Positions 1,810 to 57,624 of a stretch of 64,000 nt of DNA are shown here, one piece after another. The notes under the pieces are model-generated. The model had not been told where the DNA came from and did not search any database. It was given only the letters and a program-made list of their open reading frames with translations. The translations under genes were made by a program, and so were the position numbers. The DNA is from Octopus bimaculoides. Its lineage: Eukaryota. Numbering within the stretch: position 1 is the stretch's first letter; every line of letters starts with the position of its first letter. The stretch lies in NCBI RefSeq assembly GCF_001194135.2, contig NC_068986.1, forward strand, positions 41,322,661-41,386,660, read 5' to 3'.

Positions 1810-1841
<32 letters not shown>

Positions 1842-1916
1842 CCCCCCCCTCTCTGTGGGAATAATTATTTATACATTGATGTTGCATAGGTAACCTATTT
1901 ATTATTATTATCATTA

Positions 1917-2215: not shown

Positions 2216-2490
2216 ACTCCTGTGTGGCTGAGTTACCCTTAATAAAATGTTCTAATGCTATAGATGTTGGTGTATAGGATAGAATTTGACTTTTAAGAAA
2301 TTGCCTTCAAACTAGGGTTCACCTTAAAGATGAAACATGAAATCTGAACCATAATGTTCTGTGCTCTCTTACAGTGAGACAGTTTACAAATTAAAGAAAA
2401 TATCTGCTGTGCACTTTATGCTAAATTTTTTCGTTTATTACAGTGTAAGAAACAAGGCTTAAGTAAATGGTAAAATTACACTTGACACTT

Positions 2491-3592: not shown

Positions 3593-3630
<38 letters not shown>

Positions 3631-3952
3631 CTTTATTCCTTTGGAACACAAAATCTCAAAAGGCAAGATGTTATGCAAGAGTACAACATCCCCTGGCAGG
3701 AATGGACTGAACCGTTACATATAGATAGGAGCTGTCTGAGTGAGTGAGTGAGCGAGGTAAGTTTGTACTAGTCCCACAGTTCGTGTGTTGATAGTTCAAA
3801 GTTGGGGTCCAAAGTTCACAGTTTAAGTAAGTGTGTTGGATTGTTGGTTCTTAAAATATTCTTGTTATATTACATGTGGTTATTGCCATCTGTTTCGATT
3901 ATATTGTTATAACACTGTTGCAGTGTATTCATTTATCCATAAGGATATAACA
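2491..3952 (+). mobile_element. Degenerate Ty3/Gypsy LTR retrotransposon, internally deleted (truncated 5' LTR, integrase remnant, 3' LTR)
   Basis: Diverged direct repeats at ~2491-2697 and 3669-3952; the right one runs TGT...ACA and follows a purine tract (aaaaggcaaga). Between them are frameshifted integrase motifs: WSRLHI, YYLIIVDSCTKWPEV, GVPDTLVSDNG, HIFTPPYHPRSNG.VERFVDTF and a C-terminal GDRVHFKTY..GKEGWENG. No gag or RT remains. Confidence 0.85.
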
Positions 3953-6769
3953 CCTTGTTAGTTCTTGTCATGTAGGCATTGGTACTAATTACATCTCTAG
4001 TCTTTATATGACCCTAGCCAAGTATATTTAATGTATATTATGGCTAGTAAATGACCGTTTTTGCCTCAACTTAAAATGAATTGGCCTAATTTTTTTATAA
4101 CCAAGACTTTGTTGCATTAGTATACTTAATAGCATCATTTTACTGGTCATTGGAGAAAAATCAGAGCAGCAAACTCTCAGCAGTAAGTGCTAGACTACAA
4201 AATTTCTGATATCATCAGAAGATCATCCTTGTTGCCAAGTAGAAATCTTTTCTGAAGATGATACCATTTATATATCTGTAAGTTACAAGTGCTGGATTTG
4301 GTTCCACATTTATGAAAACCTATTAAACATGTTTGTCTGTCTTGCGAAAAATTTCCATTTGTTGAACTTTGACCAACTTGTGGTCTATTGCTGTGAAATA
4401 CTGCTTAGTAATCTTATATGATGAGTATAGCTCAAACCTACATTTTAAATGGAGAATCTAGGAGCTGTCTTATATATCCAGTCACCTTATACACTGAAAT
4501 TCAGTATATTGCATTTCAATTACATTTATTCTCTATCCACTTACACATAACCCCTGAAATATGATACATTTTGTATTGTACAAGCCCTGTATACAATAAA
4601 GAAAGGATTATCCATATTTAGCAGAAGTGAGAGAGCATCACAAAAGAAATATCTTTTGGTTTTTGTTCTAGCTCTTTACATTCTGACTTCAAATCCTGCT
4701 GAGCCTTTAGTCTTTGCCTTTAGTCCTTCAGAATTCAATAAAATAAAGTATCAGTCAGTTTACTGGGATTGGTGTAATTGGTTATGCTCCTTCCTTCAAT
4801 TTCTGGCCTTGTGCCCTTGTTAGAAATAATTATTGTTCTTATTATCCAGGATGGGGGTAGGGTGGCAAGTAATATCACTGCATTTTGCTTGATGCTCGCT
4901 GTTCAAATTTCACTGATATCAACTTCACTTTCCTGCCTCTGGGCTCAATGAAATGAAGTTCCATTCAAGTACTGGGATGATTTAATCAACTAACCCCATC
5001 TCTGCTTCTACTAATGACCTTGTGCTTATATTATTATTATTATTGCTTTTTTTTAATTGCATATTTCTTTCTGGGTTGTAGTCATTTAACTTCACTTAAA
5101 AGTTATGGTGGAGAAAATATAAATCTATTTTTTTACTCTTGTTCTATAAATCTGAATAGACTATTGTGACCAGGATTAATCAATATTTGTCGTGTATTCT
5201 TCTACTTTACGATAATATTTAAAGTGGTTGTCAATGGGTTCAAAGACCTCATTGAGAACCAGTTGTTTTGAGATACAATGACACTTGTTGGAGTTGTGAG
5301 ACAAGCTGTCACATGTCGATTATGAGACATGACTTCTTGAACTTAAAAAATTGAATTATGTGCCCTCAATATTAAAGACATATAATTGAGAAATTTCACT
5401 GATATCAAGCCAGTCAAGAGAATCTTGCTCATTGGTAATAGTTGAATAGCTTGTAGACAACATACTCTTTGGAGTTGTGCATAGCCTTTTCAGGTTCTCA
5501 TAGATTGGAAAGGCTAATCAGGTTAAGATAATGCCTTTAATGTTTATTTTGAAATGTTGCAGATGATGGTTGAGAGGGGTTTTCTTTTTTAAGAAGGGGT
5601 GTGTATACTGGAAAGAGTTTGTGAACAACGCTAGTGAGACATTCATAGGTGAGACAGTAAAAGGTGTGATTAAAGGAAGTGAGGCAAATGAATCATTTAC
5701 ATCTCGATGAAGCAGTAAGCAATCAGCAATTTCAAAGAATATTGTAGCAGTATATGGGTACAGTTTGATATTAGTTTTAAAATTATAGACTTTGGGAGAG
5801 TGAGGTATCAAGTAAAAGCTGGATGTATAAAAAGGTGCATCAGACTAAATACATGAGCAATTATCATATTAGATATATTTGTACTTTGCGAAAATTTTTA
5901 TGTATCAAATAAAGCAGTTTATTATCAAAAGAAAAGCAACATTGATTTAATTCAACAATGAATGTAGACTACCCTACAGTTAATAGATATGTTGACTGTA
6001 TTAATGTTTATTATAGTTCTCAAATCAATTAGTGACATTCCTCTCCTTTTGCATGTATGTGTGTGTGTGAATGAATTCAGTGATTTTGTGTGTAAAATCA
6101 TTATGTAAATTGTTCAACACTCAAGTAGCAGTCACAAAGTGAAGAGGAACTGGGCATTTTGTCTTTTCCTTTTCTATTAAAGTTTTCAACATTATCTTAC
6201 CACTACCTTCTGACTTTATGCTACTGTTATAGCACTACCACATCTATGTTCATCTGTTCCTAAACCATCTTCATCACAACCATCACTACCACTCTCTTTT
6301 TCTCTACTTTACACTACCATCCTCTCTTTACACTTCTATCGTTTCTTTTCTTCATAACTTCACCTCTCCCATCAACATTATTACCTAAGGCATTAGTAAA
6401 GGAGCCTGATAGAAGTCAAATCTCCATCTAATCACATCCCATTATCATAAAAATAATATTAGTGTAGTTCTACATACTCAATAAATGAGATGGTCACAGC
6501 TAGAATGCCTGTGATTACAGGTCTACCATCTGGTTTGATTTGGAGCTAAACAACAGTACCATCTCTACTACCTCCACAACAGTTTACACTGTTATTTGCT
6601 TTTGCTGCTATCACCATCACTAACTATATTTCTACTTCTACCATCAGCTTTACAGTATTTTTCAAGTGGTCTCTCTATTGTCAAGTCTAATGAACAATTA
6701 ATTTGTCTTACTGATTTAAGACATATAATTTCAAATAGCAGTACTTCAACTGGACAATTCTCTCTCTCT

Positions 6770-8407: not shown

Positions 8408-8499
8408 NNNNNNNNNNNNNNNNNNNNNNNNNNNNNNNNNNNNNNNNNNNNNNNNNNNNNNNNNNNNNNNNNNNNNNNNNNNNNNNNNNNNNNNNNNNN

Positions 8500-10183: not shown

Positions 10184-11346
10184 ATTCCGATTCTGATGAA
10201 GTGGTAATTATTGGCTCAGAAGGCTTAGATGATACAAATGACGGAGATGTTATCTTTGTATCACAGTACAAATCTTCTTCAGAACCCATTACCATAGATT
10301 GTACAACATCTAAAGAAGCAGAAAATGACAGTGCCAAAGTTGTTCATTTAAATGAAGAACAGCACTGTGAAATGGATGAAGATGATGTACAAGATATAAG
10401 TACTATTTCCTCAATTAAACTTGCAGACTTCTGTCAGCGTTCCAGTCAAATCTACAATGACGATAATGATCCCACAGATCAGCTTGTTATAAAGCCCCGT
10501 GACTCACTTGGATCTTTAAGCATTGGTAATAACTTTGGTCTTTCTCTCTCGGTGGAAGAACACAATAAAACTCAGTCAAAGCCAGTAATGGTTGTTGATG
10601 TTTCCCCAAGAATTGAGACTCCAATGGAAAATGATGGTGAGCCTTGTACTCATGAACTGAGTGTTTGTGATAAATGCATACCAGACAAAGAGGAAAATTC
10701 TGAATCTCGTATGGATTTTAGGACTAATTTTGACAACACTGAGAATAAAGTGATCATGAAAAAAGAAGAGAATGTCTTGCCCCAAAACTCAGGAATTTGT
10801 AAATGGAATGTTGATGAGCCTGTTACGGATAATTGTTCTGGTCAAAAAGCCAGTGGTTTACAACTTCAAGAAGAAGAAGATAATGACACAAGTGTTACAA
10901 TTACTCCTTGTAGCCAGACAGCTAATATGTTGTCATCAAAATATGATCCCTGCTGTTCAGATTCTTCATCAAATCCAAATCTTATTTATCATTGTATTAA
11001 AGAAAAGAATGGCATCAGTGAACACCCTGTGGCTATGTGTCAAAAGCTGAAAACAAAATTCTGCCACTCTTCTGATCCTTCATCGCCAAACAATTCTCCG
11101 GATGTTACATCGGTAATTGATCATGGCTCCCCTCGAAAGAAGCACATGTTAACTTCACGAACATGGATTCCAGCCTCTGTAATGGCAGAAGAGGATAATC
11201 AAAGAGCAGTAAAGAAAGGTGCTTGTGTAGCTTGCAAAGCACTTGTAAAAGAAGATGAAGGTTCATCTTGTGTTGATCACCATCTTACTTGTAGGGGATG
11301 TTTGGAGGACAAAGTAAAAGCAGTTCTAAGTCGAAGATGTTTAGAG
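10184..11346 (+). CDS. SIM-RING-PARP gene, first identified coding exon (1163 nt): SIM-like motifs, acidic disordered region, first six RING ligands
   Basis: Strong acceptor ttttctctttctttctag| at 10183 (phase 1) and donor GAG|gtaagt at 11347 (phase 0), inside the 417-aa ORF. Encodes DSDEVVIIGSE, DGDVIFVS, EPITIDC, VMVVDVS, and ends CVACKALVKEDEGSSCVDHHLTCRGCLEDKVKAVLSRRCLE (C-x2-C-x11-C-x3-H-x2-C-x2-C). Confidence 0.88.
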
Positions 11347-17085: not shown

Positions 17086-19694
17086 AATTGCAATTGTGAC
17101 TGTAATAAAAATAATGCCATCAACATTAATGAAAATTACTTTCAAGAGACAAGGGAGAGAATTCATGTGACCAGAAATTAGATTTATTAGTCGGTATTCA
17201 ATTATGTTCTTCACTGGAAAAGATCATAAATGCAAGTATATATTGTGTGTGCGTGTGTGGAAATATCTAAATCTTATTTGTTCATCATCATTGCTTTATA
17301 TCCATTGCTTATGCTGGCATTTGCTTGATGGATTCACCACAGTCTTACTATGAAGTTCCTGCCATCAAAAATAGGTTAGAGAACATGTCTCACTTGTACA
17401 TTCCATTTTTGGCAAGGCTTCTTATGGTTGGATACCCTACCTAATTACCCACTAATTTACGGTGTGCTGGGTACATTTTATCATGACACTAGCACTAGAC
17501 AGCTTTTCTTGTCATCCTTATGTTGTCGCTGTTCATTTGTCCATCACTTTGCAGAGTGTACTGAGTGCATTCTACTGCAACACAATTAAAGAGAACCTTC
17601 TACTCTGTCTCCATTCATTCAAATCAGCATGATTAAGAAGCGGCTGATGAAAGTGAGATAACTAGAATCAGAGAGTGGTATAAGAGAAAGTATAACAAGA
17701 GGAAACAGAAATAGGGGCAAAAGGGTGATAGATGAAGAATTGATGGAAGAGACAGTGTTTGATAGCTACATGCTTGTTGTTAATAATGAGATTGAATAGA
17801 TAGAAAAACAAGATTTAGAGTGATAAGATGGAGACAGGATGATCATGGAATTCTTACCTACTCATTTCCTATTTATCAAGTGTGTCAGTTTCCCTAATGG
17901 TTAAAGAGTTCTGTTTTTCATACTTAAGTAATTACAAATTTTACTTTGAGGTTATTCAATTTGAGGTTTTGCTTCCATGTTCAAAATTTCTTCTCTAAAA
18001 CTTCTACATGAATTAGATCCACAGCATACTGAAGTTTCCGTTCATAGTTGGTCATAACTCCTCTGTTATGATCCAGAAGACTTAAGTGAACAAGACAACC
18101 ATGCCCTGATGGACCCTACCCATTTGTTAAATTTAGCACTGAACATATTGATAATTCATACTTTGATGACTGCACCTCTGTATATGGTGTCTTACATGGC
18201 TCTCATAATCCATTTATCTATTGCTGTTTTCTTTAGCAACCATCACATTACAGAACATGGAACCCAGTCAAATACTTTCTCCATGTTGATGTGTGTTAGA
18301 TATAGTGTTTTACTCTTAGCTAAATACTTTTATAGTTGTCTCACTCGAGAAATAGCATTAACAGTATATCTTTCTAATCTAAAACCAAATTGGGTCTCAT
18401 CCTAAGTCTATTTTTAATCAGTTATGCTGAAGCTCTGCCATTAATTTTTATAATCTGATCCATTAATTTGATGCTTCAAGTTGTTGCTTTTCTGTAGTGC
18501 ATCTCCTCTATTTGCTGACATTAATACCACTATACTAATAATTAGGTATAACGCCTCTCTGTACTATCAGGTTGACTATGTAAATGACTAGCTGATGACA
18601 TGTTTTACTGGATAGATGTTTTAAGCATCTCAATGGTTGTTCCTGATGTTTCAGCTGCCTTCCATGTTTTCATATTCTTAAACTCCCCTTACAAATATAA
18701 TACTGTCAACTTCAATGGCTGGTCCAGTGGCTACCTCTAGGACATCTTCTGTTGGATGTACTTGGAATAGACCTCCTTACATTCTACTCATTTAACGCAT
18801 GTGTGCATGCACATGCATGTACATATATAAAGATTTGCAACTCCTCTACCAGCAGTACTGCATCCAAAGCTAAGTGCCACCTCTGAGCTCCTGTAGAACT
18901 GTGTGAATGTGCATTATCAGGATCATTGTTTTATATAACAAGGAAATTATATCAGAGAGATTTACCTGTTAGAAATAGGTTTTGTTCTACTGCACACATT
19001 AAAAATATCAGTTGAATTTTAATAATGTAAAGGAAAAGCATTTCAACTTTAAAATGTTCTGCATTTAATTCCCTTTTGAGCTGGGGATGGACTGTTAGTA
19101 CAAACTATACAATGAATGTCGGACAGTATGTTTATGGATATGGTTAGGAGTAATTTATGGAATATGTCAGATATAAATATAGGAAATAGAGACACTGATG
19201 ACAGCTCAGGATAACATTACATTTGAACAAAGCTGTCAGGCAAGTGTGAAAAAATATATACTGATGCAGATTTTATTTTGTAATGTATGTTCACTATAAG
19301 AGATAGGTCATGAAAAAAACATTGTGCTAAAATAAGAAAACTTTTTTTTTTAAATATTAGCTTCTGAAAATTAATAGCGTAGGCTAATTATAGCTTTATT
19401 GATAGCAGTTTAATTACCTATTAATATGATGTCCTTCAAAACAACTAATTTGTACTAGAAATAGCTAATATATTTCTTTTTTTCCTTACACATTTAGCTT
19501 AATAAGCAATTTTGTTATATTAGTCTGCTTAAGTAGTTCCTTTAAAAAGGGGCTGTTTAAGGCTTTAATTTGAATGTTATGTTTTACACAGTGTCCATTT
19601 ACTGGCTAGCAATTCATCTGAAGCACTCTTAGGTGGAACTAAAAAGAAAAAGAAAATAGCCATAGTCATAAATAATATATCCAATGCACTGATT

Positions 19695-20000
19695 CATCAT
19701 CATCATCATCGATTAATGTCCGCTTTCCATGCTAGCATGGGTTGGGCGATTTGACTGAGGACTGGTGAAACCGGATGGCTACACCAGGCTCCAATCTGAT
19801 TTGGCAGAGTTTCTACAGCTGGATGCCCTTCCTTATGCCAACCACTCTGAGAGTGTAGTGGGTGCTTTTACGTGCCACCCGCACCACACGAGGCCAGTCA
19901 GGCGGTACTGGCAACAGCCACGCTCAAATGGTGTATTTTATGTGCCACCCACACAAGAGCCAGTCCAGGGGCACTGGCAACGATCTCGCTCGAAAAGTCC
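19695..20000 (-). mobile_element. RTE-tail-related retroposon (SINE or short LINE 3' end), antisense
   Basis: Starts with (cat)n, then near reverse complement of the 40860-41052 copy (tccgctttccatgctagcatgggttgg...cagctggatgcccttcc). Older antisense copies at ~17281-17500, 32035-32160 and 50480-50720. Confidence 0.8.
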
Positions 20001-21282: not shown

Positions 21283-21416
21283 NNNNNNNNNNNNNNNNNN
21301 NNNNNNNNNNNNNNNNNNNNNNNNNNNNNNNNNNNNNNNNNNNNNNNNNNNNNNNNNNNNNNNNNNNNNNNNNNNNNNNNNNNNNNNNNNNNNNNNNNNN
21401 NNNNNNNNNNNNNNNN

Positions 21417-32669: not shown

Positions 32670-32698
32670 TTTATATATATATATATATNNNNNNNNNN

Positions 32699-32787: not shown

Positions 32788-33403
32788 TACAAGTGAGTGT
32801 GTAGTGGGACATAGTCCTTAAATGCTTAGGATGTGTGGAAACTAGAAAAAAAATATGAAGCAAGCATGCTTCACTGGATATATGATATTAGTGTGCATGA
32901 CAGTATTAAAGAGCTGAGAGAAAAATGGATGTAAGAGGAATTGAATGTAATGTGCAAGGGAGAAGACTGCAATAGCATGACCATGTGATATGATCATCAC
33001 ATAAAGAAGTGTCACATACTCAAAATGAATGATACCTGTGAAAGACATGGGACAAATTGGTGAAGACTGATCTCAAGAGGTTACATCTCATGGAGAGATG
33101 ATGATGGCCTGTTTTAATTAGTAATTTGTGATGTGACCAACAAAGCAAGAATGGTGATTCAAAATTCATAAAAAGTGGTAGTGATGTAAATCTAGATATA
33201 TGCACCATTAAGTCTACTGTTGCTTCTCACACTTTGTCACCCTCTCATTTTCTCATCACTCACTTTCCTATCACCCTTGCTGCACATTAATGCAGGACCT
33301 TCCCACACGCTGTTCCTCCATCATCCTTCTCTTCACTTGGCCTCTATCACTCAAGCTGGACCATCTCAAAGTCTGTTTTAGAGGAGACTACATTGGACCA
33401 CAT

Positions 33404-33786
33404 TGTTGTTGGCACTCCGTTGCTTACGACGTCGAGGGTTCCAGTTGATCCGATCAACGGAACAGCCTGCTCGTGAAATTAACATGCAAGTGGCTGAGCA
33501 CTCCACAGACACGTGTACCCTTAACGTAGTTCTCGGGGATATTCAGCGTGACACAGTGTGACAAGGCTGACCCTTTGAAATACAGGCACAACAGAAACAG
33601 GAAGTAAGAGTGAGAGAAAGTTGTGGTGGAAGAGTACAGCAGGGTTCACCACCATCCCCTGCGGAAGCCTTGTGGAGCTTTAGGTGTTTTTGCTCAATAA
33701 ACACTCACAACACCCGGTCTGGGAATCAAAACTACGATCCTATGACCGCGAGTCCACTACCCTAACCACTGGGCCATTGCGCCTCC
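33404..33786 (-). mobile_element. Full-length tRNA-derived SINE with 14-bp TSD
   Basis: Minus-strand head ggaggcgcaatggcccagtggttagggtagtggactcgcggtcataggatcgtagttttgattccc (A/B boxes) and (AAC)n tail. Flanked by acattggaccacat at 33390-33403 and 33787-33800. Confidence 0.93.
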
Positions 33787-33819
33787 ACATTGGACCACAT
33801 ACACTCAATACATTCTACC

Positions 33820-34330: not shown

Positions 34331-36351
34331 ATGTACCTGTCTTAAAATACTAAGTGCCTTTATCACTCAGTCCCTATATCATGCATCCCTTTTAACACCA
34401 TCATTTATGCTTCTATCAGCCATACCTCTGACTCTTTAAAGAGGTTGGTGAGTAAATATGTGCAGTTCTGAGCTCCTGTCAGGCATGTTGTGGACATGGA
34501 TATCTCTCTAGTGTTGGTGTCTCAAAAAATGTGCTCAGTATACTCATAAAAGTGTATAGTTACCTTGTCAAGGACATGACTCATTTTTAGTGCTGGTGCC
34601 AAGAAAAGTAATGCAATACATTCTGTAAAGTGGTTTGTGTTTGGAAAGGCATCCAACCATTGAAACTGAATCAAAAATGAAATGCATTAGCAAGATGTGG
34701 TACTCCAATTCATCTTGGTAAGCAGTTCACTCGAATACATACTGAATATGTACTTATTCTGATCAGAGTAAGCCATCCAACCCCTATCATCATGGAAAGT
34801 AGTGCATTTAGAACTACATTATTCACTGTGCCCAGTTTTGAAGACAATAGGATGTAACTTGACTGCTACTACTAGCAGTTTGAGTGATCATGTAGAAGCT
34901 TCTTCTCATTGGTTTGCATCACTATTTATTGTTAGACATGCTATCATAAGATGTAGAATTTGTGGTCTCATTTTAAAGATGGTTAAAAATTTGTGAAAAA
35001 TAATTTTAGCTGCTACATTGTGAAAGTAGCCCAACTATATAGCAACTCATTTATTAGCTCAATGCAGTGGTAGTAAATAGGGAGTGTTTACAAAAATTCA
35101 AATTTAGATCAGGTATCTAGGATATAAGCCACAGCAGGTAAGATAAAAACAGCTGCAGATATTAAGCTGTTATAAATTAAACAGAAATCTACTTCATCCA
35201 TGACAACATGGTTAAATGGACACTAACCCAAGAAGTGTGATGATAGTGATTCTGTTTTTAAACTCTTGAACTTTGATTGACCTTTTCATGTCTAAAGTTA
35301 TTTCTGTTATAATCTGTCAGCTGTTATGCTACCACTGTTTTAAATGCAGATTGATACATGCATTCTGATCCTTCATTCATAGTTCATCATTGAAGCAGTT
35401 GGATATACTGATGATGATTGACAACCATGCAAAACAGCTTAATAATAATAATAATAGTGGTTGTGGTGGCAGCGATGGTGGTGGTGGTGGTGGTGGTGAT
35501 GTAAAAAAAAAAAGTGGGGGAAATATTTTCACCAGAACACACAGCTGTTACTTTTATATTTTTATGTAACTATCATTCTTAGATCACTTAGCAGTGAAGA
35601 AAAACACTAGAGAAGGCAAATGATCAATCAATAAAATGCATATTTCTGCCATGAATGCAACTTGTTTGAATAAAAGACCATCTTCTTTAGACTACATGAA
35701 TGTACATGTGTATGCACATACAATATACCAAGTGGAATGGAGGAGAAAGTGTTAAACTTAGCATGCTAACGTTCTGTCTTCTTCAATTTCTATGTTTTAA
35801 ATTGAAAGTGGTTATAATATTTTGAAGTGGTGAGGGAATTTTTTTCGTAAGTGAAAAAAAATATATTGCAAAATTTTCACTTTAAGGCTTTTGGCTAACA
35901 TGTTAGTTGATATAAAAATAACATTTTTCATTATTAATATTTTTCCATTTTTTTTTTTATGGAGCTGTCCTCTATTTATGTTTTATTTTAATAAAGTAAT
36001 ATAATGTTATTTCTTAACATTTTAAACTTTAATATACAAATTTTTAAAATCAAATTGCAGTAAGGAATATATTTACTGTGTGTGTGCACATGTGTGTGTG
36101 AGTTAATACCCCAGAGGAAATTATTTTTGAAGGAATCTTTAGTTGTGTGTGTGTAATATTATAGGTTATAATTGGAATGCTAGGTTTCCAATATATATAT
36201 TTAAATTAGACTTTAAGATATAGGATTCTCATGCCTTTACCAATGTACACATGAATAAATCTGTTTATTTATATATTCATATTTTTTTTTCAGACATCTG
36301 TAAAGTGCCTAGAAGCAGGCTGTAACAATTTCTATTCAAAACGTATGTATA

Positions 36352-37872: not shown

Positions 37873-38105
37873 ATGAACTGAGGCGTTGTTTGCCTGCAAT
37901 GATAGTGGATATTCTTGAAGAAGTTCTTGAACAATATTATGTTGATTTCATAACAAATATGCTAATGAAATCCTATTCTCCAAGTGATACCTCTGTGGGG
38001 CCTGATAATGAAATGACTGTAGGAGAACTTGAACGTCCTCGAAAGCGGTTAGCAATCAGTTATGATAGCTTACCAGAAAACTGGGTTGAAATGGAATCAA
38101 AATTT
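37873..38105 (+). CDS. SIM-RING-PARP gene exon (233 nt): post-RING helix, NLS-like RPRKR, pre-PARP LPENWVEM motif
   Basis: Acceptor ttctattttccag| (phase 1) and donor TTT|gtaagt (phase 0). Encodes ELRRCLPAMIVDILEEVLEQYYVDFITNMLMKSYSPSDTSVGPDNEMTVGELERPRKRLAISYDSLPENWVEMESKF. Confidence 0.88.
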
Positions 38106-38736: not shown

Positions 38737-38882
38737 AGTAATCAGCTATTCGTTTTGGATTCTGATTCTCAAGAATATGTCAATGTGTCTAGAATGTTTT
38801 TGTCTTCAATGCATTATCCAGCCACTGAAATAGTACGAATCTCTCGAATCCAAAATCCTATTTTATGGAAATATTACTGCTT
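38737..38882 (+). CDS. SIM-RING-PARP gene exon (146 nt): start of the PARP catalytic domain
   Basis: Acceptor ccttttgtttttttcag| (phase 0) and donor TT|gtaagt (phase 2). Encodes SNQLFVLDSDSQEYVNVSRMFLSSMHYPATEIVRISRIQNPILWKYYCL, the S.EY..V...F and RIQN..LW signature. Absent from the ORF track (<60 aa). Confidence 0.93.
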
Positions 38883-39890: not shown

Positions 39891-41475
39891 GTTGCTGGTG
39901 CTGCATAAAAACACCCAGTACACTTTGTAAAGTGGTTGGTTTTGAGGACATTCAGACATTCAGTCAAAGAAATCATGCCAAAACAAGCATGAAACCTAGG
40001 CAGCTCATCAGCTGGCCAACTTCTGTTAAACCATCCAACTCATGCCAGCATGGAAAACGGACATTAAATGATAATGATGATGATGATAATTATTTTCTCT
40101 ACTATTTGCAAAAAAAAAAAAAACTTTTTATTTTTCATCTTACAGAAAAAAGCGTGAGATGGTACAAGAGAATGATGGTCTTAATGTTGAAGAAAGACAA
40201 CTATTCCATGGTACAAAAAGCAAAGTGGTTGAACCTATATGTCGTAAGGGATTTGACTGGAGGCTCTGTGGAAAACATGGTACTGTTTATGGACATGGTA
40301 AGTAGCTTTTATTGTGTGCTGCATTATAACTTTTGTCTAAATGACATAAAAAGTAGGAGACATGAAATATGTCAAAAAGGATTCAGAAAAATTAATTTTT
40401 TATACCCAAAGATTGGTTTGAACATTGTCTAAACCCTTTTATTCAATCTACTCAATTGAAGGCATCATGTTTGTCCAGTACAATTTGATTGAAAAAAAAT
40501 ATGAATGAAATATTTTTGTTTAAAAATATTGGTCCATTGATTTTCTCACCAACAAATTTTAACAAAAGACACACACACTCACACACTGTGCCATGAGAAA
40601 GTACTTAGCATTTTCTGAAAAGTGGTTAGTATTGGGAAAAGTATTCAGCTGTAGAAATCATGCCAAAGCAGACATAGCAGTATGATGTAATCCTCCAACA
40701 TGTTGATCCCTGTTGGACCATCCAACCCATGCCAGCATGGAGAGTGGGCATTAATTGACAATGATGATAATGATCATCATCATCACTGATTTTATGTCTA
40801 CCCTTCCATGCTGGTAGGACTTTTTGAAGATTACAACTCTATTAGTCACCCGTTTGCCTGACTGGCCTTCGTGCCAGTGGCATGTAAAAGCGCCCACTAC
40901 GCTTTCGGAGTGGTTGGCGTTAGGAAGGGCATCCAGCTGTAGAAACTCTGCCAAATTAGATTGGAGCCTGGTGTAGCCATCTGGTCCACCAGTCCTCAGT
41001 CAAATCGTCCAACCCATGCTAGCATGGAAAGCGGACGTTAAACGACGATGATTACAACATGCTGGAATGTTGTGCATATTCTGTAAGGTGATTAGCATTG
41101 AGAAGGGTATTCATTTGTAGAATAGTATCTATTCTAAAAATTGGGATACACACAATTACCAGATAAGATTGGAGCCTGGTGTGGCCTCCTGGCTTGCCAG
41201 TCCCCAGTCAAACCGTCCAACCTATGCCAGCATGGAAAATAGACGTTAAACAATGATGATGATGATGACAATCATAGATGCACACACATGTACAGTGGGT
41301 TGTTGCACTGTTTCTTTCAACCAAATTTTATTTACAAGGCATTGGATAGAAGGGTATCCAACTGTAGAAGCCATGCCAAAACAGACAATAGAGCTTGGCA
41401 CAGTCCTCCAGCTTGCCAGCTCTATTTAAACCATCCAACCCAGCATGGAGAACAAACATTAAAAGGCGATGATTA
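39891..41475 (+). mobile_element. Cluster of five same-orientation RTE-tail retroposon copies around the HGT exon
   Basis: Copies at ~39891-40090, 40590-40778, 40855-41052, 41056-41270 and 41335-41475, each ending ccatccaacccatgccagcatggaaa..acgttaaa(gat)n-like. Confidence 0.8.
40146..40297 (+). CDS. SIM-RING-PARP gene exon (152 nt): NAD-binding HGT motif and D-loop
   Basis: Acceptor tttttcatcttacag| (phase 2) and donor G|gtaagt (phase 1). Encodes KKREMVQENDGLNVEERQLFHGTKSKVVEPICRKGFDWRLCGKHGTVYGH; His codon 40207-40209. Confidence 0.95.
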
Positions 41476-41519
41476 TTGGTCACCCAAAGTCTGTTAGAAA
41501 ACACTTGTGGTGCACATAT

Positions 41520-41906
41520 TTTTTTTGTTGTCACTCCGTCGCTTACTACGTTGAGGGTTCCAGTTGATCCGATCAACGGAACAGCCTGCTCATGAAATTA
41601 ATGTGCAAGTGGCTGAGCACTCCACAGACACGTGTACCCTTAACGTAGTAGTTGTCGGGGATATTCAGCATGACACAGTGTGACGAGGCTGACCCTTTGA
41701 ATTACAGGCACAACAGAAACAGGAAGAAAGAGTGAGAGAAAGTTGTGGTGAAAGAGTACAGCAGGGTTTGCCACCATCCCTGGAGCCTCGTGGAACTTTA
41801 GGTGTTTTCGCTCAATAAACACTCACAACGCCCGGTCTGGGAATCAAAACCGCGATCCTATGACTGTGAGTCTGCTGCCCTAACCACTGGGCCATTGCGC
41901 CTCCAC
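41520..41906 (-). mobile_element. Full-length tRNA-derived SINE with 11-bp TSD (same family as 33404-33786)
   Basis: Near-identical body to the 33.4-kb copy; ggtgcacatat at 41509-41519 and 41907-41917. Confidence 0.92.
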
Positions 41907-43945
41907 GGTGCACATATAGTTGCCAAGCAAACTGTGTCCTTTTTGAATTTACTTATCATATCCTTCATGTCGTTTTTATCACATTCCTAAATAGAATGAA
42001 AAGCTAATTTGATTTGTGTAGGATTTGAACTGGAAGATAGAATACCATAAAATGTTTATTTTGGTGTTTATCTCTTTAGAAACTTACTATGAAAATACAT
42101 TTTATGATATATAATAATTGGTCATTAAAACATTCTGGTGCTAGAGATTGTGTTGCTGGCATTACAATACTACCTGCTCTGCTGTGGCTTCCTCAAAATA
42201 TAACTATCCCTCTTATGAGATCATTCTCTCACCTTAACAGACATTAAAACTTGTTACTTTAAATTGAATACTCTAAGATTTGTCTCCCTTGTATACATTT
42301 ACATTCTCCAGTGACAGCTCATTTATAATAATGAAAATACAGTACTTTCAATTCTGATCATTTTTCATCACTCCACATTAACAGCATCAGTGCTTAATCT
42401 AATTTTCCACAATGCTACAATCATAAACCATGAATTAAAAAATTCCTTTTATGGTAGATTTCAAAATTATTGAAGGGCATCTATCTTCCATATTGGACTC
42501 ACCCAATTAGAAAGCTTTTAGTGCCAAAAGAAGTAAACCCCCTCCCACAGGTGAACCACCTGTATTATTATTTGAAACTGCCCATAAAGTCTTCAAAATT
42601 CACTATGAAAACAGCAATTGAAGCCTTAAGGCCTAATGTCATTTAAGTTACGTTATCTATGAATTTTTAAAAATTGAACCTGCATTATTGTTCTCAGCAT
42701 AGATGCATCCCTATAGGTTCTTATGTACTTTCATTTCACTCCAGTTACTTATATACTTCCCCACTCTTGCCCTACACAGTCGTTTCAGTTCCTAGATACT
42801 GTTCTAAGAGACCAATAAGTCTTATGGTGCTTGTTCCTCTCCCACTTCAGCTGACCATTAGTTTTTCAGTGGGAAGCTCTTTTACATTTTGACAGATTTT
42901 AGCTTTAGTCCATGCCAGATCCCATACACTCTCCTCACCCAGTATATTTGTTGGGATTGTTTAATTTAGTCACCAACCACTTAACCGAGATAAACTATAC
43001 TGAGTTACATAATGATTACGAAGTGGGTGACTTCAAAAGAGAATAATACCAAATACTTTTAAAAATGCTTTTAAAAAGTGGATCATATTATATCAAATCC
43101 TAATAGCTACAGGTCCACTTAAATATTTCAACATTATATAAAATATGTCTCAGGGTGTAAGTGAAACAATTTATATCATAGTTCAAGAAGAGTGTCCAAA
43201 AAGAGTTTATTTTAAATGCAAACACCAATTCCTAGCAGATGCATTATAAATATTAGATAGTACAAGATAACTCCATGAAGAAGAGAACTACCCTAATATC
43301 AGTATTGTTTGATTGAATGAAAATGTAATACAGTATATTCCTGACTAAATTTTAACTGCCTCCAGGTTTTAAATCAACATATTAGATCTTGTCAAACCTT
43401 ATTACTTAATTAGTATAGTAGATATAATGATCATATCTATGTTATGCAAATGTCCCAAGAGATTAGACTTAACGAGTTATGTACACTACATGTACTAAAG
43501 AATTTGTATTGTTGCTTTAGCCAACTGAACTGCTGTAGAAATTCATAATTAGCTTACAAAAAGAGTGTGTTCAGGTTCCTATAGCAAGTGAAATAATGTA
43601 ACTATCATACTATTTAATAATGTAATAATTATTTTTACCATACCTTATTACTACTACAATTTACCTAAGTAAACTTTACAATCTAGGCCATAACTTAAAT
43701 TCTCATTATCTTACTGACTCTACTCAAAGCATTATAAACCCCTAGATAAAATATAAAAACGACAAAACAATATGATTTGCACATGCATACACACCTTATA
43801 CTTTTGTGCCACTATAATCTTAGGGAAAATATTGCAAAAAGCAATAAAGTATATTGAGATAATGTAAAATTCACTTAGATTTACTACATTTCTATTTTTC
43901 CTTTTTAATTGTATCCTCTTTTCATTTTTGTCTTTTTCATTGTAG

Positions 43946-45915
43946 GCTCCTACTTTGCGGGCGAGGCTTCATACTCTCATCAATTTACTGATGACATTCG
44001 TATTAAGCGGCAGCGTCCGATTCCAGCTGGTCGTGTCAGTTCTAACAACATTGCAATGACCACTAAAGTCTTCTGCAATCCTTACAATAAAAATGCTTTC
44101 CTCAAGTTGAGTCCAAGTATTAATATTCCAAGTATGAACCCAGCTGCACCACTGCAATTAACAGGCTATACAAGTTCAGTGACCACCTATACTGCTCAAG
44201 GAAGCATAATGGCCAGTTCTAGTAACAACCCATTTGTTAGTCAAGCTTTATTAGGAGCTGCACCTCCTGGAGCTGGATCAAATATATGTTGTCCGACTAT
44301 CAAAGCTACTAACAATCCAAACACTGCTGTAAACAGAGTACCGTCTAATCGCATAAACATTGTCATGATGCCAATGACAGATGCAGACAAGAACCAAACT
44401 GTTCAGAATATGCCTAATATGCAAGACACTTCATCAGTTGGCATTGCTCCTAATGTCCCATCATCTTCTTCATCTTCAACACCCTCATCATCATCTTCAT
44501 ATTCATTACAAAATTTGACTGTATCCTTTCCTTCCAGTGGTAATGTTGGTCCTACTGTAACTGCTAACAATACAGTTATGCAGTCTCCGCTTGTGCTGTC
44601 AACAGCCCCTAAACAGCTAGTACACCAACAACTGCAGACAGTGCCAGTGACTAGCACACCTCAACATATCCCTCTGGTTGTACCCTTCCAGGCAGGAACT
44701 GCTGTTAATCCCAAAAGCCATTTGGCTTCACACTCACACTCTAAATTAATCTTTGGAGGATTGTCACAACCACAACAGCAAATGCAACAACAGCAACAAC
44801 AACAACAGCAGCAGCAGCAGCAAAAATACCTTCTGCAGCGCATCACACAACGACTTCAGACACAACCCACACAACGACTGCAGGCACAAGCAACACAACG
44901 ACTCCAGCAACCAGCGATACCATCGCAGGCGCTGCAGTCACAGCAACTCTCACAAGCTCAACAGCCATTATTGCAATTGCAGGCTGTGCAACAACTACAA
45001 CCATCACCGCAATTACAGACTGCTGCACAAGTTCCACAGTTAGCCCAACCGCAACATCATCAGCAACCACAGCAAGTTGGGCCAACACTGCAACAGGTCA
45101 CATCAACTTCAGCACCTCAGCTGATAACACTCGGAGAATTTTTGTCCCCTTTTCAAACAGGAGCTTCGGCAGCTAAAGTTAACATGGTGTCTCACACCCA
45201 GCCGAAACTTGTTTTTGGAAGAGTGCCATCTCAACAACAATCTCAACAACAGCAGCCTCAGCAACAAGTAATGGCCCAGCAAGCTGGTGTACCTCCACAG
45301 AACCAACCCCAAGCCCCACCCCAGCATATACAAGCTGCACAACAAACACCACATCATCTACATCACTATCACCATCACCACCATCACCACCACCATCACC
45401 AAGCCCCAGTGCAACCACAGCAGCAACCCCAACAAATATTCCTGCGGAAAGGTTTTGTTGTGCCCATTCCACCAGGAACTTCTGGTCCTAAAGTCAGCAC
45501 TGTTGGCCATTCACAATCCAAACTAATAGTGAAAGTACCACCAGCACCACCAGCACCATCCCAACAACAACAGCTGGTCCCACAGACCCAGCCTCAGCCC
45601 CCTACCCCACAAGCAATCCAGGCTCAACAGACAGCAAACACACTCCAACTCTACTGCCAAAATGGAGAACCCCATACGACACGGACCTCAATACCTACAA
45701 ACTGCACGCGGAAAATGTTCATTGCCAAAGTTCTCGTGGGCAAGTACACAGGTGGTAACAGCAGCCTGAAGAAAGCCCCACCTTTATATCCATGTGCCGA
45801 ACCATTTGGAAAATGCTATGACTCTTGTGTAGACAACATATGGGACCCAAAGATTTTTGTTATATTTGATAGTGCCCAAGCTTACCCCGATTATTTAATA
45901 GAATATGTTGTATAG
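43946..45915 (+). CDS. SIM-RING-PARP gene, terminal exon (1970 nt): PARP11/PARP12/TIPARP-like catalytic domain C-half with a ~570-aa low-complexity insertion
   Basis: Acceptor tctttttcattgtag| (phase 1). Encodes GSYFAGEASYSHQFTDD, the insert, then RKMFIAKVLVGKYTGGNSSLKKAPP..CYDSCVDNIWDPKIFVIFDSAQAYPDYLIEYVV-stop (TAG 45913-45915). Triad Tyr at 43951 and Ile at 45853. No stop in 656 codons. Confidence 0.94.
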
Positions 45916-55850: not shown

Positions 55851-56117
55851 TGTTGGTACTCCGTCGCTTACGACGTCGAGGGTTCCAGTTGATCTGATCA
55901 ATGGAACAGCCTGCTCGTGAAATTAACGTGCAAGTGGCTGAGCACTCCACAGACATGTGTACCCTTAACGTAGTTCTCGGGGATATTCAGTGTGACAAGG
56001 CTGACCCTTTGAATTACAGGCACAACAGAAACAGGAAGTAAGAGTGAGAGAAAGTTGTGGTGAAAGAGTACAGCAGGGTTCGCCACCATCCCCTGCCGGA
56101 GCCTCGTGGAGCTTTAG
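55851..56117 (-). mobile_element. tRNA-derived SINE (33.4/41.5-kb family), head lost in gap N 56118-56265
   Basis: Near-identical 3' two-thirds: actccgtcgcttacgacgtcgagggttccagttgatc...ggagctttag. Confidence 0.9.
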
Positions 56118-57624
56118 NNNNNNNNNNNNNNNNNNNNNNNNNNNNNNNNNNNNNNNNNNNNNNNNNNNNNNNNNNNNNNNNNNNNNNNNNNNNNNNNNNN
56201 NNNNNNNNNNNNNNNNNNNNNNNNNNNNNNNNNNNNNNNNNNNNNNNNNNNNNNNNNNNNNNNNNTCTTTGTTAAAAATCCCAAACACGCTTAACCAGCC
56301 CAATCCAAATTGACCTATGGAAAACTGTAATATTGCTTCAATTATTACTCTACAAATATACCCCTTCTAATGGCCAATATTTTATAGGGACTGACAACTG
56401 GAAGAGCCAAGGCAATAAGAGCTCTGGCTCACAATATTACTTGGAAAATAGCCCAGAAATTGTTGCTGAATAAAGACATAGGTCTGTTTGAAGACCTTTG
56501 CCATGCTGAAACTGATAAGATCTGAACCTGGGATGCAAAGGACTAATGTTTTTCAGTTGTGTTGTTTGAACATGAAATAATCAACATTTTCTTTTTTTTT
56601 TTTAGCCAATGAATGGCTTAGGCAATGATATATTGTTTTCAAATGTAATCTAAAGTTGCAATGAATACTTAGATTTAATTGCAACAAATACTGGCTACAT
56701 AAAGACTCATCAGCATCTTAGAGTGATAACTGTAATAATATGATGGCTGTAGCATGCTAAAGACTAAAAAAAATTGATCTTATTGGTTTTATAAAAGTAA
56801 CATTAAAGATATTCATTTTACTAAGCATGTAGGTAATATGGCTGATAAAATTAACTACTTTCGCATTCTTTAAAAAATATTGTTAAAAAATGTAAAGCTC
56901 AATGTTGAAAGGAAGAAACTAATCTACAGATAAATATAACCAGTGCCTATGCTGTTTTATTCTGAAGTACAAATTTCTATTGAAGAGAAAGCCTTGTTAT
57001 TATGACAAACAAAAGATTATTTAGATAAGACATTCTAGTTTAACATTTAATTGAACAGATATGGTAAAACTGAACTGTATCAAATAAGTGTATGAAGAAG
57101 TTTTCTGTAGCCAAGATATCAGAATAGTTTGATTACACAAGGATAATATCGACAGCTAAACAAAAGAAACCTTACACAGTATTGGATTAAGAGTATGGCA
57201 TGTAATATGTACAGACTTGAAAATACAAGTTAATTAGCTTTTGGCTTTTCCATCTCTGTCTCAGTGGTTAAGAACAGATAAAGTCATTAAATTACAAGCT
57301 AGATAGTCTGTACATGTAGTCAGATGTTCTCTGCCCACAATGATTATGATAAGATAATACACTTGTTTTTTTGCAATGTAATTTGCAAAGTAAATGTAAA
57401 AGATTGGGAGGTGACTATAAAAACCATTTCAGTTGCCAGGCACCATTAAAATACAATAAATATTTTGGATTTTTTGTAGGCCTTATCACCATAGTTTGAT
57501 TTTTGGGAAGTTAAATTCATACCAAACCAATGGATAAACAATTCAAATGCAAAGTATGTTAAACTGTCTGAATGCTGATAAGTAGCTAAAGAGAAGTTAA
57601 AAATTCTGTTTTAAAAGTTTTCAG

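What the first reader, a model, noticed from the sequence alone, without database searches (positions are those of the whole stretch)
43996..45705. PARP catalytic domain split by a ~570-aa in-frame low-complexity insertion
The loop between ASYSHQFTDD and RKMFIAKVLVG is, from my recollection, under ~10 aa in PARP12/TIPARP and ~25 aa in PARP11. Here it is about 570 stop-free codons rich in Q, P, S, T, H and N, within one exon and visibly more GC-rich than the introns (seen). The fold must assemble around a disordered region much larger than itself. The polyQ/prion-like composition suggests a condensate-forming or regulatory module inserted into the enzyme core (inference). Domain scanners would probably report two partial PARP hits.
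Basis: partly seen in the sequence, partly recalled or inferred. Interest (0 to 1): 0.88.

Follow-up and report, generated by a model that had tools for sequence, protein, structure and literature searches.

The report
Disordered insert splitting a PARP domain
A mollusc ADP-ribosyltransferase gene really does carry a 571-residue disordered, glutamine-rich stretch in the middle of its catalytic domain, but this is the extreme case of an insert present throughout an undescribed mollusc/annelid enzyme family, not a one-off.

Summary
The last exon (43946-45915, + strand) encodes GSYFAGEASYSHQFTDD, then 571 stop-free codons (43996-45708), then RKMFIAKVLVG...EYVV*. Chance of such an open frame is about 1e-11.

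The interpretation needs revision in three ways:
- **Not unique.** Every full-length orthologue found has a low-complexity, acid-poor insert of 84-401 aa at this loop, in one exon. These span chiton, limpets, abalone, scallop, pearl oyster, mussel-like bivalves and pulmonate snails. A partial leech protein has about 250 aa. Octopus is the longest found.
- **Not PARP11/12/TIPARP by architecture.** There is no WWE domain or CCCH finger. Upstream lie acidic SIM-like motifs and an RNF216-like RBR RING1.
- **Exitron not supported.** The proposed splice sites are weak. Apparent mRNA contigs from two relatives and RefSeq models keep the insert.

AlphaFold with an alignment folds both PARP halves confidently and leaves the insert disordered, apart from a polyQ helix. 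H-Y-I residues are intact, so a mono-ADP-ribosyltransferase is predicted. A 33-aa unit repeated three times is conserved at protein level despite near-saturated third codon positions, which argues for translation and constraint.

The function (tethering, interaction or condensate module next to the acceptor site) is inference. No literature describing the family was found.

The parts
10184..11346 (+). Large upstream coding exon of the same gene. It encodes acidic SIM-like motifs (DSDSDEVVIIGSE...DVIFVSQ), an acid-rich disordered region (D+E 18%), and the first half of an RBR-type RING1 (CVACK...C.DHH..C..CLEDKVKAVLS). The true 5' end and start codon lie further upstream and were not located.
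   Evidence: Acceptor ctag|ATTCC and donor GAG|gtaagt. tblastn with orthologues. Spliced frame. Composition.
36294..36342 (+). 49-nt micro-exon encoding TSVKCLEAGCNNFYSK, which carries the last two Cys ligands of the RING1-like finger.
   Evidence: Splice sites read. Weak tblastn hits to Pinctada and another bivalve. Fits the invariant C50/C55 columns of alignment A1.
37873..38105 (+). Exon encoding the helix after RING1 (ELRRCLPAMIVDILEEVLEQYYVDFI), a linker, and the start of the PARP domain (LPENWVEME).
38737..38882 (+). PARP catalytic domain exon (QLFVLDSDSQEYVNV...RIQNPILWKYYCL).
40146..40297 (+). PARP catalytic domain exon carrying the catalytic His (ERQLFHGT) and the donor-loop region (GFDWRLCGKHGTVYGHG).
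43946..43995 (+). Start of the last exon and end of the N-terminal PARP half: (G)SYFAGEASYSHQFTDD. It contains the triad Tyr and the Ser/aromatic of the nicotinamide pocket. The intron position just before GSYFA is shared with the relatives whose genomic ORFs were read.
43996..45708 (+). The insert: 571 codons with no stop. Predicted disordered, net charge +24, D+E 0.9%.
43996..44040 (+). Basic patch at the start of the insert (IRIKRQRPIPAGRVS). It is the only part alignable to other family members (KKQRPRIRP, NRRRGR, FRRTR, NRRGRHP).
   Evidence: tblastn alignments.
44668..44769 (+). Internal repeat unit 1 (IPLVVPFQAGTAVNPKSHLASHSHSKLIFGGLSQ).
   Evidence: Pairwise scores of 51-58 against a null of 18 +/- 4 (maximum 41 in 3000 shuffles). 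About half of the conserved residues use different codons.
44766..44907 (+). Mixed CAA/CAG polyQ run followed by a 24-nt x 2.7 tandem repeat (TQRLQxQx). This is the only confidently predicted structure in the insert, an alpha-helix with pLDDT about 87-91.
45133..45231 (+). Internal repeat unit 2 (GEFLSPFQTGASAAKVNMVSHTQPKLVFGRVPS).
45361..45401 (+). CAT/CAC tract encoding the histidine run (HHLHHYHHHHHHHHHH).
45448..45546 (+). Internal repeat unit 3 (KGFVVPIPPGTSGPKVSTVGHSQSKLIVKVPPA).
   Evidence: (D5).
45709..45915 (+). C-terminal PARP half (RKMFIAKVLVGKYTGG...CYDSCVDNIWDPKIFVIFDSAQAYPDYLIEYVV) and TAG stop. It contains the Ile that replaces the catalytic Glu, giving an H-Y-I triad.

Best explanation
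Shown: the 571 codons are a translated, intrinsically disordered insertion in the surface loop that follows the nicotinamide-stacking helix of a mono-ADP-ribosyltransferase (H-Y-I) PARP domain. Such an insertion is found in every member examined of an undescribed mollusc and leech protein family. The family architecture is an acidic SIM-like N-terminus, an RNF216-like RING1, and a PARP domain split by an acid-poor S/T/P/Q/N-rich disordered region. The window's gene is the longest and most Q/H-rich example found. It grew partly by an old threefold duplication of a unit made of a 33-aa motif plus a Q-rich spacer, and partly by CAG/CAA, CAT/CAC and 24-nt slippage.

Inferred: the two halves of the fold close around the base of the loop. 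The cationic, acid-free chain projects from the acceptor-site side of the enzyme. There it acts as a flexible multivalent interaction or tethering module, through short conserved motifs plus Q/H-rich self-association. This would concentrate or position substrates, or gate access to the active site. It is not part of the catalytic machinery.
For: **The insert is real and coding**
- Open frame with P of about 1e-11, and coding-type base composition at the three codon positions.
- Spliced frame is continuous with the upstream PARP exons.

**The fold and catalytic residues are intact**
- PF00644 scores 85 bits in two stretches.
- The best solved relative is human PARP12, E=3e-48, with H, Y and I aligned.
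- AlphaFold with 47 sequences gives pLDDT mostly 88-98 for residues 1-130 and 94-98 for residues 701-767. The insert scores 30-46.
- Foldseek's top hits are PARP12 and PARP15.

**The insert is a family trait**
- A partial Helobdella protein has about a 250-aa Q/P/H-rich insert at the same site.
- Chiton, Patella, Haliotis, Gigantopelta, Mizuhopecten, Pinctada, Potamilus, Biomphalaria, Bulinus and Bradybaena have 170-401 aa.
- The intron sits just before GSYFA in the relatives whose genomic ORFs were read.

**The insert is kept in apparent mRNA**
- Contigs of 3.2 and 4.9 kb carry uninterrupted full-length ORFs that include the insert. I read them as mRNA-derived because the gene is multi-exon in the window and in Lymnaea.
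- RefSeq models also include it.

**There is constraint on the insert**
- It is 96-97% identical with 0-1 gap between congeners, like the rest of the protein. At depth it decays to about 35%, like the N-terminal disordered region.
- D+E is 0-4.3% in all inserts against 8.5-18% in the N-terminal disordered region of the same proteins.
- The three octopus units are conserved at protein level while third-position identity is only 0.36-0.55.
- PPPAH and P[LM]NLS recur across inserts far above shuffled expectation: 8 against 0.24, and 9 against 0.06.

**The loop position matters**
By my recollection of the tankyrase sequence, the same loop in tankyrases holds the G-loop and zinc motif. The paper states that this motif connects to the nicotinamide/acceptor site (PMC8941426).
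Against: - No RNA or protein data exist for this gene itself, and no cephalopod orthologue could be retrieved.
- Apart from the basic patch at its start, the octopus insert has no significant similarity to any other family insert (best E=0.73). It lacks exact PPPAH and P[LM]NLS motifs.
- The octopus repeat-unit HMM finds nothing above shuffled controls elsewhere. Any shared function must therefore lie in composition and position, not sequence.
- Some short mollusc proteins that lack the N-terminal region have only 35-58 aa at this loop (Dreissena, Biomphalaria). Whether they are true paralogues was not tested. If they are, a long insert is not needed for the fold.
- The Lymnaea gene model removes the insert as an intron.
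- The functional part of the statement (tethering, gating, condensates) rests on composition and geometry only.
Confidence: 0.6

Rival explanations
1. Neutral low-complexity expansion. The loop tolerates any length, and slippage plus segmental duplication have inflated it without the sequence doing anything. Only 'no stops, no acidic or structure-breaking interference' is selected.
For: - Length varies from 35 to 571 aa among relatives, with abundant indels.
- Lineage-specific tandem repeats occur: polyQ, polyH and the 24-nt repeat here, and NPIQNVQQGLSSQ repeats in Biomphalaria.
- The octopus insert is not alignable to the others.
- No Pfam domain or homologue was found for its non-Q part.
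Against: - An insert of at least 84 aa is retained in every full-length family member across several mollusc classes, and about 250 aa in a partial leech protein.
- Acid depletion is uniform, in contrast to the acid-rich N-terminal disordered region of the same proteins.
- Recurrent PPPAH and P[LM]NLS motifs.
- The threefold unit is kept at protein level despite near-saturated third codon positions.
- Congeners differ by 0-1 indel.
Confidence: 0.25
2. Exitron. The insert, or most of it, is an in-frame alternative intron, so the cell can make both a compact canonical PARP and the long form.
For:
- The segment is GC-richer than true introns and encodes disorder. These are typical exitron traits (Marquez et al. 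2015, PMC4484396).
- The deposited Lymnaea stagnalis model CAL1535107 splices out exactly this region: 831 nt, or 277 codons, that are open in the genome.
Against: - No donor inside the insert matches at least 7 of 9 consensus positions. The proposed donor matches 4 of 9 and the proposed acceptor tract is 45% pyrimidine. The gene's real donors are all GTAAGT and its acceptors are T-rich.
- The Lymnaea annotation combined ab initio prediction, protein alignments and RNA on a hard-masked genome (PMC11589774). Its intron may therefore be an artefact.
- Two full-length apparent mRNA contigs and seven RefSeq models keep the insert. The annotated isoform pairs seen differ by only 1-4 aa.
- Protein-level conservation of the repeat units argues that the insert is translated.
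Confidence: 0.1
3. Artefact: a misassembly, or a decaying pseudo-exon that happens to remain open.
For: The assembly has N gaps elsewhere in the window, and the window's own protein was not found in the protein collections.
Against: - The exon has no gaps and both flanks are in frame.
- The same one-exon structure occurs in independent genomes and transcripts of relatives.
- The probability of the open frame arising by chance is about 1e-11.
- Catalytic motifs are intact.
Confidence: 0.03

Closest known systems
Human PARP12 catalytic domain (PDB 2PQF, 6V3W, 8XPX) and the PARP7/11/12/13 clade
   Same: It is the best solved sequence relative (E=3e-48, about 45% identity). It has the same H-Y-I triad positions, the same YDSCV and IFVIF motifs, and the same fold. 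NCBI names some short mollusc relatives 'PARP11-like' or 'TIPARP-like'.
   Different: The PARP12 loop here is about 8 aa (SKSDTQTH) and the PARP11 loop is 27 aa, against 571 aa. The window's gene has no WWE or CCCH domains and has a RING1 instead.
Tankyrase G-loop and zinc-binding motif
   Same: By my recollection of the TNKS sequence, it is an insertion in the same loop, between the nicotinamide-stacking aromatic and the following beta-strand. It lies about 20 Å from the active site but connects to the nicotinamide/acceptor sub-pocket. It is not strictly required for catalysis in TNKS2 (PMC8941426).
   Different: The tankyrase insert is a 12-residue folded Cys-His-Cys-Cys zinc loop that stabilises the domain. 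The insert here is about 50 times longer, metal-ligand-poor and predicted disordered.
RNF216 (TRIAD3) RBR E3 ligase
   Same: The family profile of the Cys/His region matches RNF216 RING1 plus the following helix (7M4M, E=1.8e-8). ARIH2 RING1 is the next hit. From memory, an N-terminal acidic SIM-like arrangement is also reported for RNF216.
   Different: There is no IBR and no RING2 or catalytic Cys. A PARP domain follows instead.
Exitrons (Marquez et al. 2015, PMC4484396)
   Same: The segment is inside a coding exon, has a length that is a multiple of three, encodes disorder, and is GC-richer than the introns.
   Different: No credible internal splice sites and no RNA evidence here. Relatives' transcripts retain the region.
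DTX3L-PARP9 type pairing of ubiquitin E3 and PARP modules
   Same: An E2-binding RING-type module is combined with a PARP-fold module (PMC10955461, seen). This is a possible functional analogy for the RING1-PARP architecture.
   Different: There the two modules are separate proteins, the RING is Deltex-type with a DTC domain, and PARP9 has no such insert. Nothing about ubiquitin was tested here.

Membership tests
PARP / ARTD catalytic domain (PF00644) | Profile match above the curated cut-off | tested here: met
   85.2 bits against a cut-off of 26.7, split into two stretches. The last exon alone scores 24.5 bits, which is below the cut-off.
PARP / ARTD catalytic domain (PF00644) | His-Tyr-(Glu/Ile/Leu/Tyr) triad and nicotinamide-pocket Ser/aromatic | tested here: met
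   LFHGT, GSYFA, ASYSHQF and KIFVIFD align to PARP12 H, Y, S/Y and I. The aromatic is Phe here and Tyr in most relatives.
PARP / ARTD catalytic domain (PF00644) | ART fold formed by both halves | tested here: inconclusive
   AlphaFold gives pLDDT mostly 88-98 for both halves. Foldseek aligned only the N-terminal half (116-122 columns, TM to target 0.58) because of the 570-residue gap.
PARP / ARTD catalytic domain (PF00644) | NAD+-dependent ADP-ribosyl transfer | not testable with these tools
   Needs an enzyme assay.
PARP12 / PARP11 / TIPARP orthologue | WWE domain upstream of the catalytic domain | tested here: not met
   No WWE hit in the 1236-aa model or in four orthologues. tblastn with WWE-containing PARPs finds no such exon in the window.
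PARP12 / PARP11 / TIPARP orthologue | CCCH zinc finger(s) (PARP12, TIPARP) | tested here: not met
   No Pfam hit. The only Cys/His cluster matches an RBR RING1.
PARP12 / PARP11 / TIPARP orthologue | Short loop (about 8-27 aa) after the ASYSH helix | tested here: not met
   571 aa, against 11-12 and 27 by the same anchor measure.
Unnamed mollusc/leech RING1-PARP family (e.g. XP_046572660, XP_021340693, XP_064599714) | Acidic SIM-like N-terminus, RNF216-like RING1, helix LPxxVVxIL, and PARP ending CYDSCVDNIxxPKIFVIFDxxQAYPxYLIEY | tested here: met
   Alignment A1 has invariant C5 C8 C20 H24 C27 C30 C50 C55. tblastn of nine orthologues places all segments in order across 10.2-45.9 kb.
Unnamed mollusc/leech RING1-PARP family (e.g. 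XP_046572660, XP_021340693, XP_064599714) | Acid-poor low-complexity insert in the same loop, within the last exon | tested here: met
RBR E3 ubiquitin ligase (RNF216-like) | RING1 | tested here: met
   Family profile against the PDB: RNF216 7M4M at E=1.8e-8, 37 bits. Single sequence: E=4.8e-4.
RBR E3 ubiquitin ligase (RNF216-like) | IBR and RING2 with catalytic Cys | tested here: not met
   No IBR or RING2 hit. The sequence runs from the RING1 helix through a short linker into the PARP domain.
Exitron | Usable internal GT...AG pair, in phase | tested here: inconclusive
   An in-phase pair exists (1605 nt), but both sites are weak and no better donor is present.
Exitron | Spliced and unspliced mRNAs both observed | not testable with these tools
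   No RNA data for this species. Relatives' transcripts retain the insert. One Lymnaea model removes it, on ambiguous evidence.
Q/N-rich (prion-like) domain | At least 30 Q/N in an 80-residue window (Michelitsch-Weissman criterion, from memory) | tested here: met
   Maximum of 39 in 80 at insert residues 256-335. Qualifying windows span residues 232-375.
Q/N-rich (prion-like) domain | Self-assembly or phase separation | not testable with these tools
   Needs experiment.

The most novel reading that the evidence does not exclude
The insert is a conserved regulatory arm of a previously unrecognised enzyme class. In this reading, a SUMO/E2-binding RNF216-like RING1 is fused to a mono-ADP-ribosyltransferase. 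The cationic, acid-free disordered arm emerges at the acceptor site. It pairs electrostatically with the protein's own acidic N-terminus, or with substrates or condensates, to switch the enzyme on and off. In cephalopods the arm has been expanded into a Q/H-rich self-associating module.
Probability: 0.15. Interest if true: 0.8.

Novelty: new variant of a known kind. Interest (0 to 1): 0.55.

Why it matters
It shows that an ART/PARP fold can be routinely built around a disordered chain up to three times its own size. The chain enters at the same loop that tankyrases use for their zinc motif. This appears to have been maintained since molluscs and annelids diverged, with a consistent compositional rule of almost no acidic residues.

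It also brings to light an unnamed RING1-PARP family that links ubiquitin/SUMO-type modules with mono-ADP-ribosylation in lophotrochozoans. That gives PARP biologists a natural series of insert lengths, 35 to 571 aa, for asking how loop-borne disordered regions affect substrate choice, localisation and auto-modification.

For genome annotation it is a caution. Domain scanners split the hit, and at least one deposited model removes the insert as an intron.

Tried and rejected
- **Whole-exon search swamped.** A word-indexed search with the whole exon was swamped by Q-rich candidates. Only 2 true hits emerged from 8000 candidates.
- **No cephalopod orthologue found.** A search with the non-polyQ 264 aa of the insert gave nothing at E<=0.01. 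The exhaustive representative search gave no hit covering the insert. Exact look-up of the ATG-started ORF returned nothing on record.
- **Single-sequence AlphaFold was useless.** Mean pLDDT was 35.
- **Apparent octopus-leech motif similarity not supported.** By eye, VVPIPPGTSG...KLIVKVPP resembled leech VLPPGSSGA...QVIVPPP. An HMM of the three octopus units scored 7.9 bits at best in real inserts, against up to 9.8 bits in shuffled ones, so I dropped it.
- **Octopus insert not alignable to others.** blastp of the octopus insert against 81 other inserts gave a best E of 0.73.
- **FG-nucleoporin-like reading not pursued.** Several relatives show hydrophobic-x-FG-Q/P motifs, but octopus has only two FG dipeptides. 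This was not distinguishable from chance.
- **Alternative short-loop 3' exon rejected.** I considered that the GC-rich stretch in the preceding intron (40.6-41.9 kb) might be such an exon. tblastn finds no PARP similarity there, and it is made of dispersed repeats.
- **No Rfam family** in 36-47 kb.
- **Taxon names** for the unnamed ENA/Logan relatives could not be obtained.
- **Literature searches** for this family or insert found nothing relevant.
Full report
**Observation**

The + strand holds one long ORF, 43909-45915. A canonical acceptor (ttgtag|G) lies at 43945/43946. Spliced to three upstream exons (37873-38105, 38737-38882, 40146-40297), the frame reads continuously. It runs ...ERQLFHGT...GTVYGHG|SYFAGEASYSHQFTDD, then 571 residues, then RKMFIAKVLVGKYTGGNSSLKKAPPLYPCAEPFGKCYDSCVDNIWDPKIFVIFDSAQAYPDYLIEYVV*.

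The insert occupies 43996-45708.

- The insert frame has no stop, while the other five frames have 21-35.
- Shuffles give a mean of 24.7 in-frame stops, never fewer than 7 in 20,000, so P(open) is about 1e-11.
- Codon positions 1-2 are C-rich and position 3 is A/T-rich, like the rest of the genome.
- GC is 0.41-0.52 in the exon against 0.23-0.30 in the flanking introns.
- Composition is Q 19%, P 12%, S 10%, T 8%, H 4%, with only five acidic residues.
- Simple tandem repeats (Ser run, CAA/CAG run, 24-nt x 2.7, CAT/CAC run) cover 257 of 1713 nt. Most of the insert is therefore not microsatellite.

**The domain it splits**

With the insert removed, the best solved relative is human PARP12 (E=3e-48). 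The alignment puts His (LFHGT), Tyr (GSYFA) and Ile (KIFVIFD) on PARP12's H-Y-I triad. It also shows PARP12's loop here is only about 8 residues. TIPARP itself was not measured.

AlphaFold without an alignment failed, with pLDDT 35. With a 47-sequence alignment it gave pLDDT mostly 88-98 for residues 1-130 and 94-98 for residues 701-767. It gave 30-46 for the insert, except one helix over the polyQ/TQRLQ repeat with pLDDT about 87-91. Foldseek's top hits were PARP12 and PARP15, although only the N-terminal half was aligned across the gap.

**The insert is a family trait**

The second hit of the first search, Helobdella robusta HELRODRAFT_167262, is a partial protein. It already shows GSYFARDASYSHMYTD, then about 250 Q/P/H-rich residues including a His run, then HVMFLARVLVG. 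Further searches returned many genomic ORFs that start at the same intron boundary and carry 100-210-aa inserts.

The searches also returned full-length proteins of 925-1189 aa. In the list below, the seven XP_ entries are RefSeq models and the other three are GenBank submitter models:

- Liolophura sinensis (chiton), XP_064599714
- Patella vulgata, XP_050409622
- Haliotis rubra, XP_046572660
- Gigantopelta aegis, XP_041366559
- Mizuhopecten yessoensis, XP_021340693
- Pinctada imbricata, KAK3101992
- Potamilus streckersoni, KAK3593994
- Biomphalaria glabrata, XP_055899265
- Bulinus truncatus, KAH9518840
- Bradybaena similaris, BFZ05031

Loop lengths by the same measure are 84-401 aa in the full-length RING1-bearing proteins. 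They fall to 35-58 aa in short mollusc proteins that lack the N-terminal region. Truncated ORFs imply at least 350-430 aa in further taxa. The window's gene has 578 by this measure, so it is the longest found but lies on a continuum. All are named 'uncharacterized', 'hypothetical' or generically PARP. Six literature searches and one targeted read found no description of the family or its insert.

**Is it translated or spliced out?**

Evidence that it is kept:
- Two Logan contigs carry uninterrupted full-length ORFs with short UTRs. One is 4903 nt with ORF 35-4006 and a 319-aa insert. The other is 3205 nt with ORF 98-3085 and a 118-aa insert.
- The gene has at least 6 exons here and at least 8 coding blocks in Lymnaea. 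I therefore infer these contigs are mRNA-derived and that they retain the insert.
- The seven RefSeq models retain it. The annotated isoform pairs seen differ by 1-4 aa only.

Within the octopus insert, no GT matches the donor consensus at 7 or more of 9 positions. The gene's real donors are all GTAAGT and its acceptors are 80-90% pyrimidine.

The one counter-example is the Lymnaea stagnalis model CAL1535107. It removes 831 nt (277 codons) that are an open in-frame insert in the genome. That annotation merged ab initio prediction, protein alignments and RNA evidence on a hard-masked genome (PMC11589774), so the intron may be an artefact.

**Constraint**

- Between congeners (Haliotis rubra/asinina, Patella vulgata/caerulea) the insert is 96-97% identical with 0-1 gap, like the rest of the protein.
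- At class or order depth it falls to 32-36% with many indels. The N-terminal disordered region falls similarly, to 36-39%. Folded parts keep 58-80%.
- Every insert is acid-poor (D+E 0-4.3%, octopus 0.9%) and net positive. The N-terminal disordered region of the same proteins has 8.5-18% D+E.
- Across 61 non-redundant inserts, PPPAH occurs in 8 (0.24 expected) and P[LM]NLS in 9 (0.06 expected). Octopus has neither exactly.
- Apart from a short basic patch at its start (IRIKRQRP against KKQRPRIRP, NRRRGR and similar), the octopus insert aligns to no other insert (best E=0.73).

**Internal anatomy of the octopus insert**

- Residues 1-255 are S/N/P/T-rich and non-repetitive, with no homologue in 5.8 billion proteins.
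- The remaining 345 residues are three degenerate copies of a 33-aa unit followed by a Q-rich spacer. The units lie at window 44668-44769, 45133-45231 and 45448-45546.
- The units score 51-58 pairwise, against 18 +/- 4 (maximum 41) for shuffles and at most 27 elsewhere in the insert.
- They share 33-39% of residues. About half of those use different codons, and third-position identity is only 0.36-0.55.
- This indicates an old duplication whose motif residues have been kept at the protein level. It is evidence, from this sequence alone, that the insert is read as protein.
- An HMM of the unit finds nothing above shuffled controls in other taxa.
- Residues 232-375 meet the criterion of at least 30 Q/N per 80 residues, with a maximum of 39.

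**The rest of the gene**

tblastn with nine orthologues lays the gene out over 10184-45915 in six exons. This gives at least 1236 aa, of which the insert is 46%. The 5' end was not found.

There is no WWE domain or CCCH finger. The N-terminus instead has acidic SIM-like motifs (DSDSDEVVIIGSE...DVIFVSQ) and an acid-rich disordered region. A Cys/His module follows with invariant C-C-C-H-C-C-C-C, then a helix LPxxVVxIL. The family profile matches RNF216 RING1 (7M4M, E=1.8e-8), with ARIH2 RING1 next. A single sequence gives E=4.8e-4. No IBR or RING2 follows. The gene therefore belongs to an undescribed RING1-PARP family. Only its catalytic domain resembles PARP12, PARP11 and TIPARP.

**Mechanism**

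Shown: a real, apparently translated, disordered, cationic insert at a fixed loop of an intact H-Y-I PARP domain, present in every family member examined.

Established knowledge: H-Y-I PARPs are mono-ADP-ribosyltransferases. By my recollection of the tankyrase sequence, the same loop in tankyrases carries the G-loop and zinc motif. That motif sits about 20 Å from the active site, connects to the nicotinamide/acceptor sub-pocket, and is not strictly needed for TNKS2 catalysis (PMC8941426).

Inferred: the chain leaves and re-enters the fold at adjacent points. It acts as a flexible multivalent arm next to the acceptor site, for partner or substrate tethering, self-association through Q/H-rich segments, or gating. 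Two speculative extras follow:
- Its near-absence of Asp and Glu may avoid cis-modification.
- That same feature may let it pair with the acidic N-terminus.

I put 0.6 on the whole statement. Most of the uncertainty lies in the functional part.

The rivals are neutral expansion in a permissive loop (0.25), an exitron (0.1) and an artefact (0.03).

**Verdict**

The claim of singularity is not. This is the extreme member of a widespread, database-visible but undescribed family trait. The exitron and condensate ideas remain untested, and the exitron is disfavoured by the sequence. I rate novelty as a new variant of a known kind and interest as moderate (0.55).

Noticed in passing
window 10184-11346, 36294-36342, 37873-37970 (+): The gene's N-terminal half encodes acidic SIM-like motifs and an RBR-type RING1 closest to RNF216 (family profile against PDB 7M4M, E=1.8e-8). 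No IBR or RING2 follows. Pfam sees nothing there. The RING1-PARP architecture appears undescribed.
   Followed up: partly
L002:8537-9367 (Lymnaea stagnalis CAXITT010000192.1): The deposited model CAL1535107 removes, as an intron, an 831-nt in-frame open segment that corresponds to the family insert. The segment contains two PPPAH motifs. The splice sites are GAG|GTACAC and CCAG|AC. It may be an annotation artefact or a real exitron.
   Followed up: partly
Inserts of relatives (P0069, P0073, P0084, P0062, P0045, L001, L002 and others): The short motifs PPPAH and P[LM]NLS recur in many family inserts far above shuffled expectation. Their binding partner is unknown. They are absent in exact form from the octopus insert.
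   Followed up: partly
P0127 (Biomphalaria glabrata XP_055899265), insert region: The insert contains about ten tandem copies of a 13-aa unit (NPIQNVQQGLSSQ), showing lineage-specific repeat growth at the same loop. P0072 and P0074 have NPGPSQQ-type repeats.
   Followed up: no
window 40621-41906 (intron before the last exon); copies at 19694-19903, 33403-33788, 39968-40093, 55851-56117: The GC-rich stretch inside the intron is a cluster of dispersed repeats, 70-91% identical to other copies in the window. It is not an exon.
   Followed up: partly
window 8408-8499, 21283-21416, 32689-32698, 56118-56265: Assembly gaps (N runs). At least the first three are flanked by TA/CT/GT microsatellites. 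None lies in a coding exon of this gene.
   Followed up: no
window 10184-11346 versus 43996-45708: The two disordered regions carry opposite charge. The N-terminal region has D+E 18% and K+R 9% over 346 aa, and the insert has net charge +24. The same polarity is seen in most orthologues, which suggests a possible intramolecular interaction.
   Followed up: no
P0068 (709 aa, unnamed): The top-scoring representative hit is a protein with three tandem short-loop PARP catalytic domains. It scored highest only because of its multiple matches and is unrelated to the insert.
   Followed up: no
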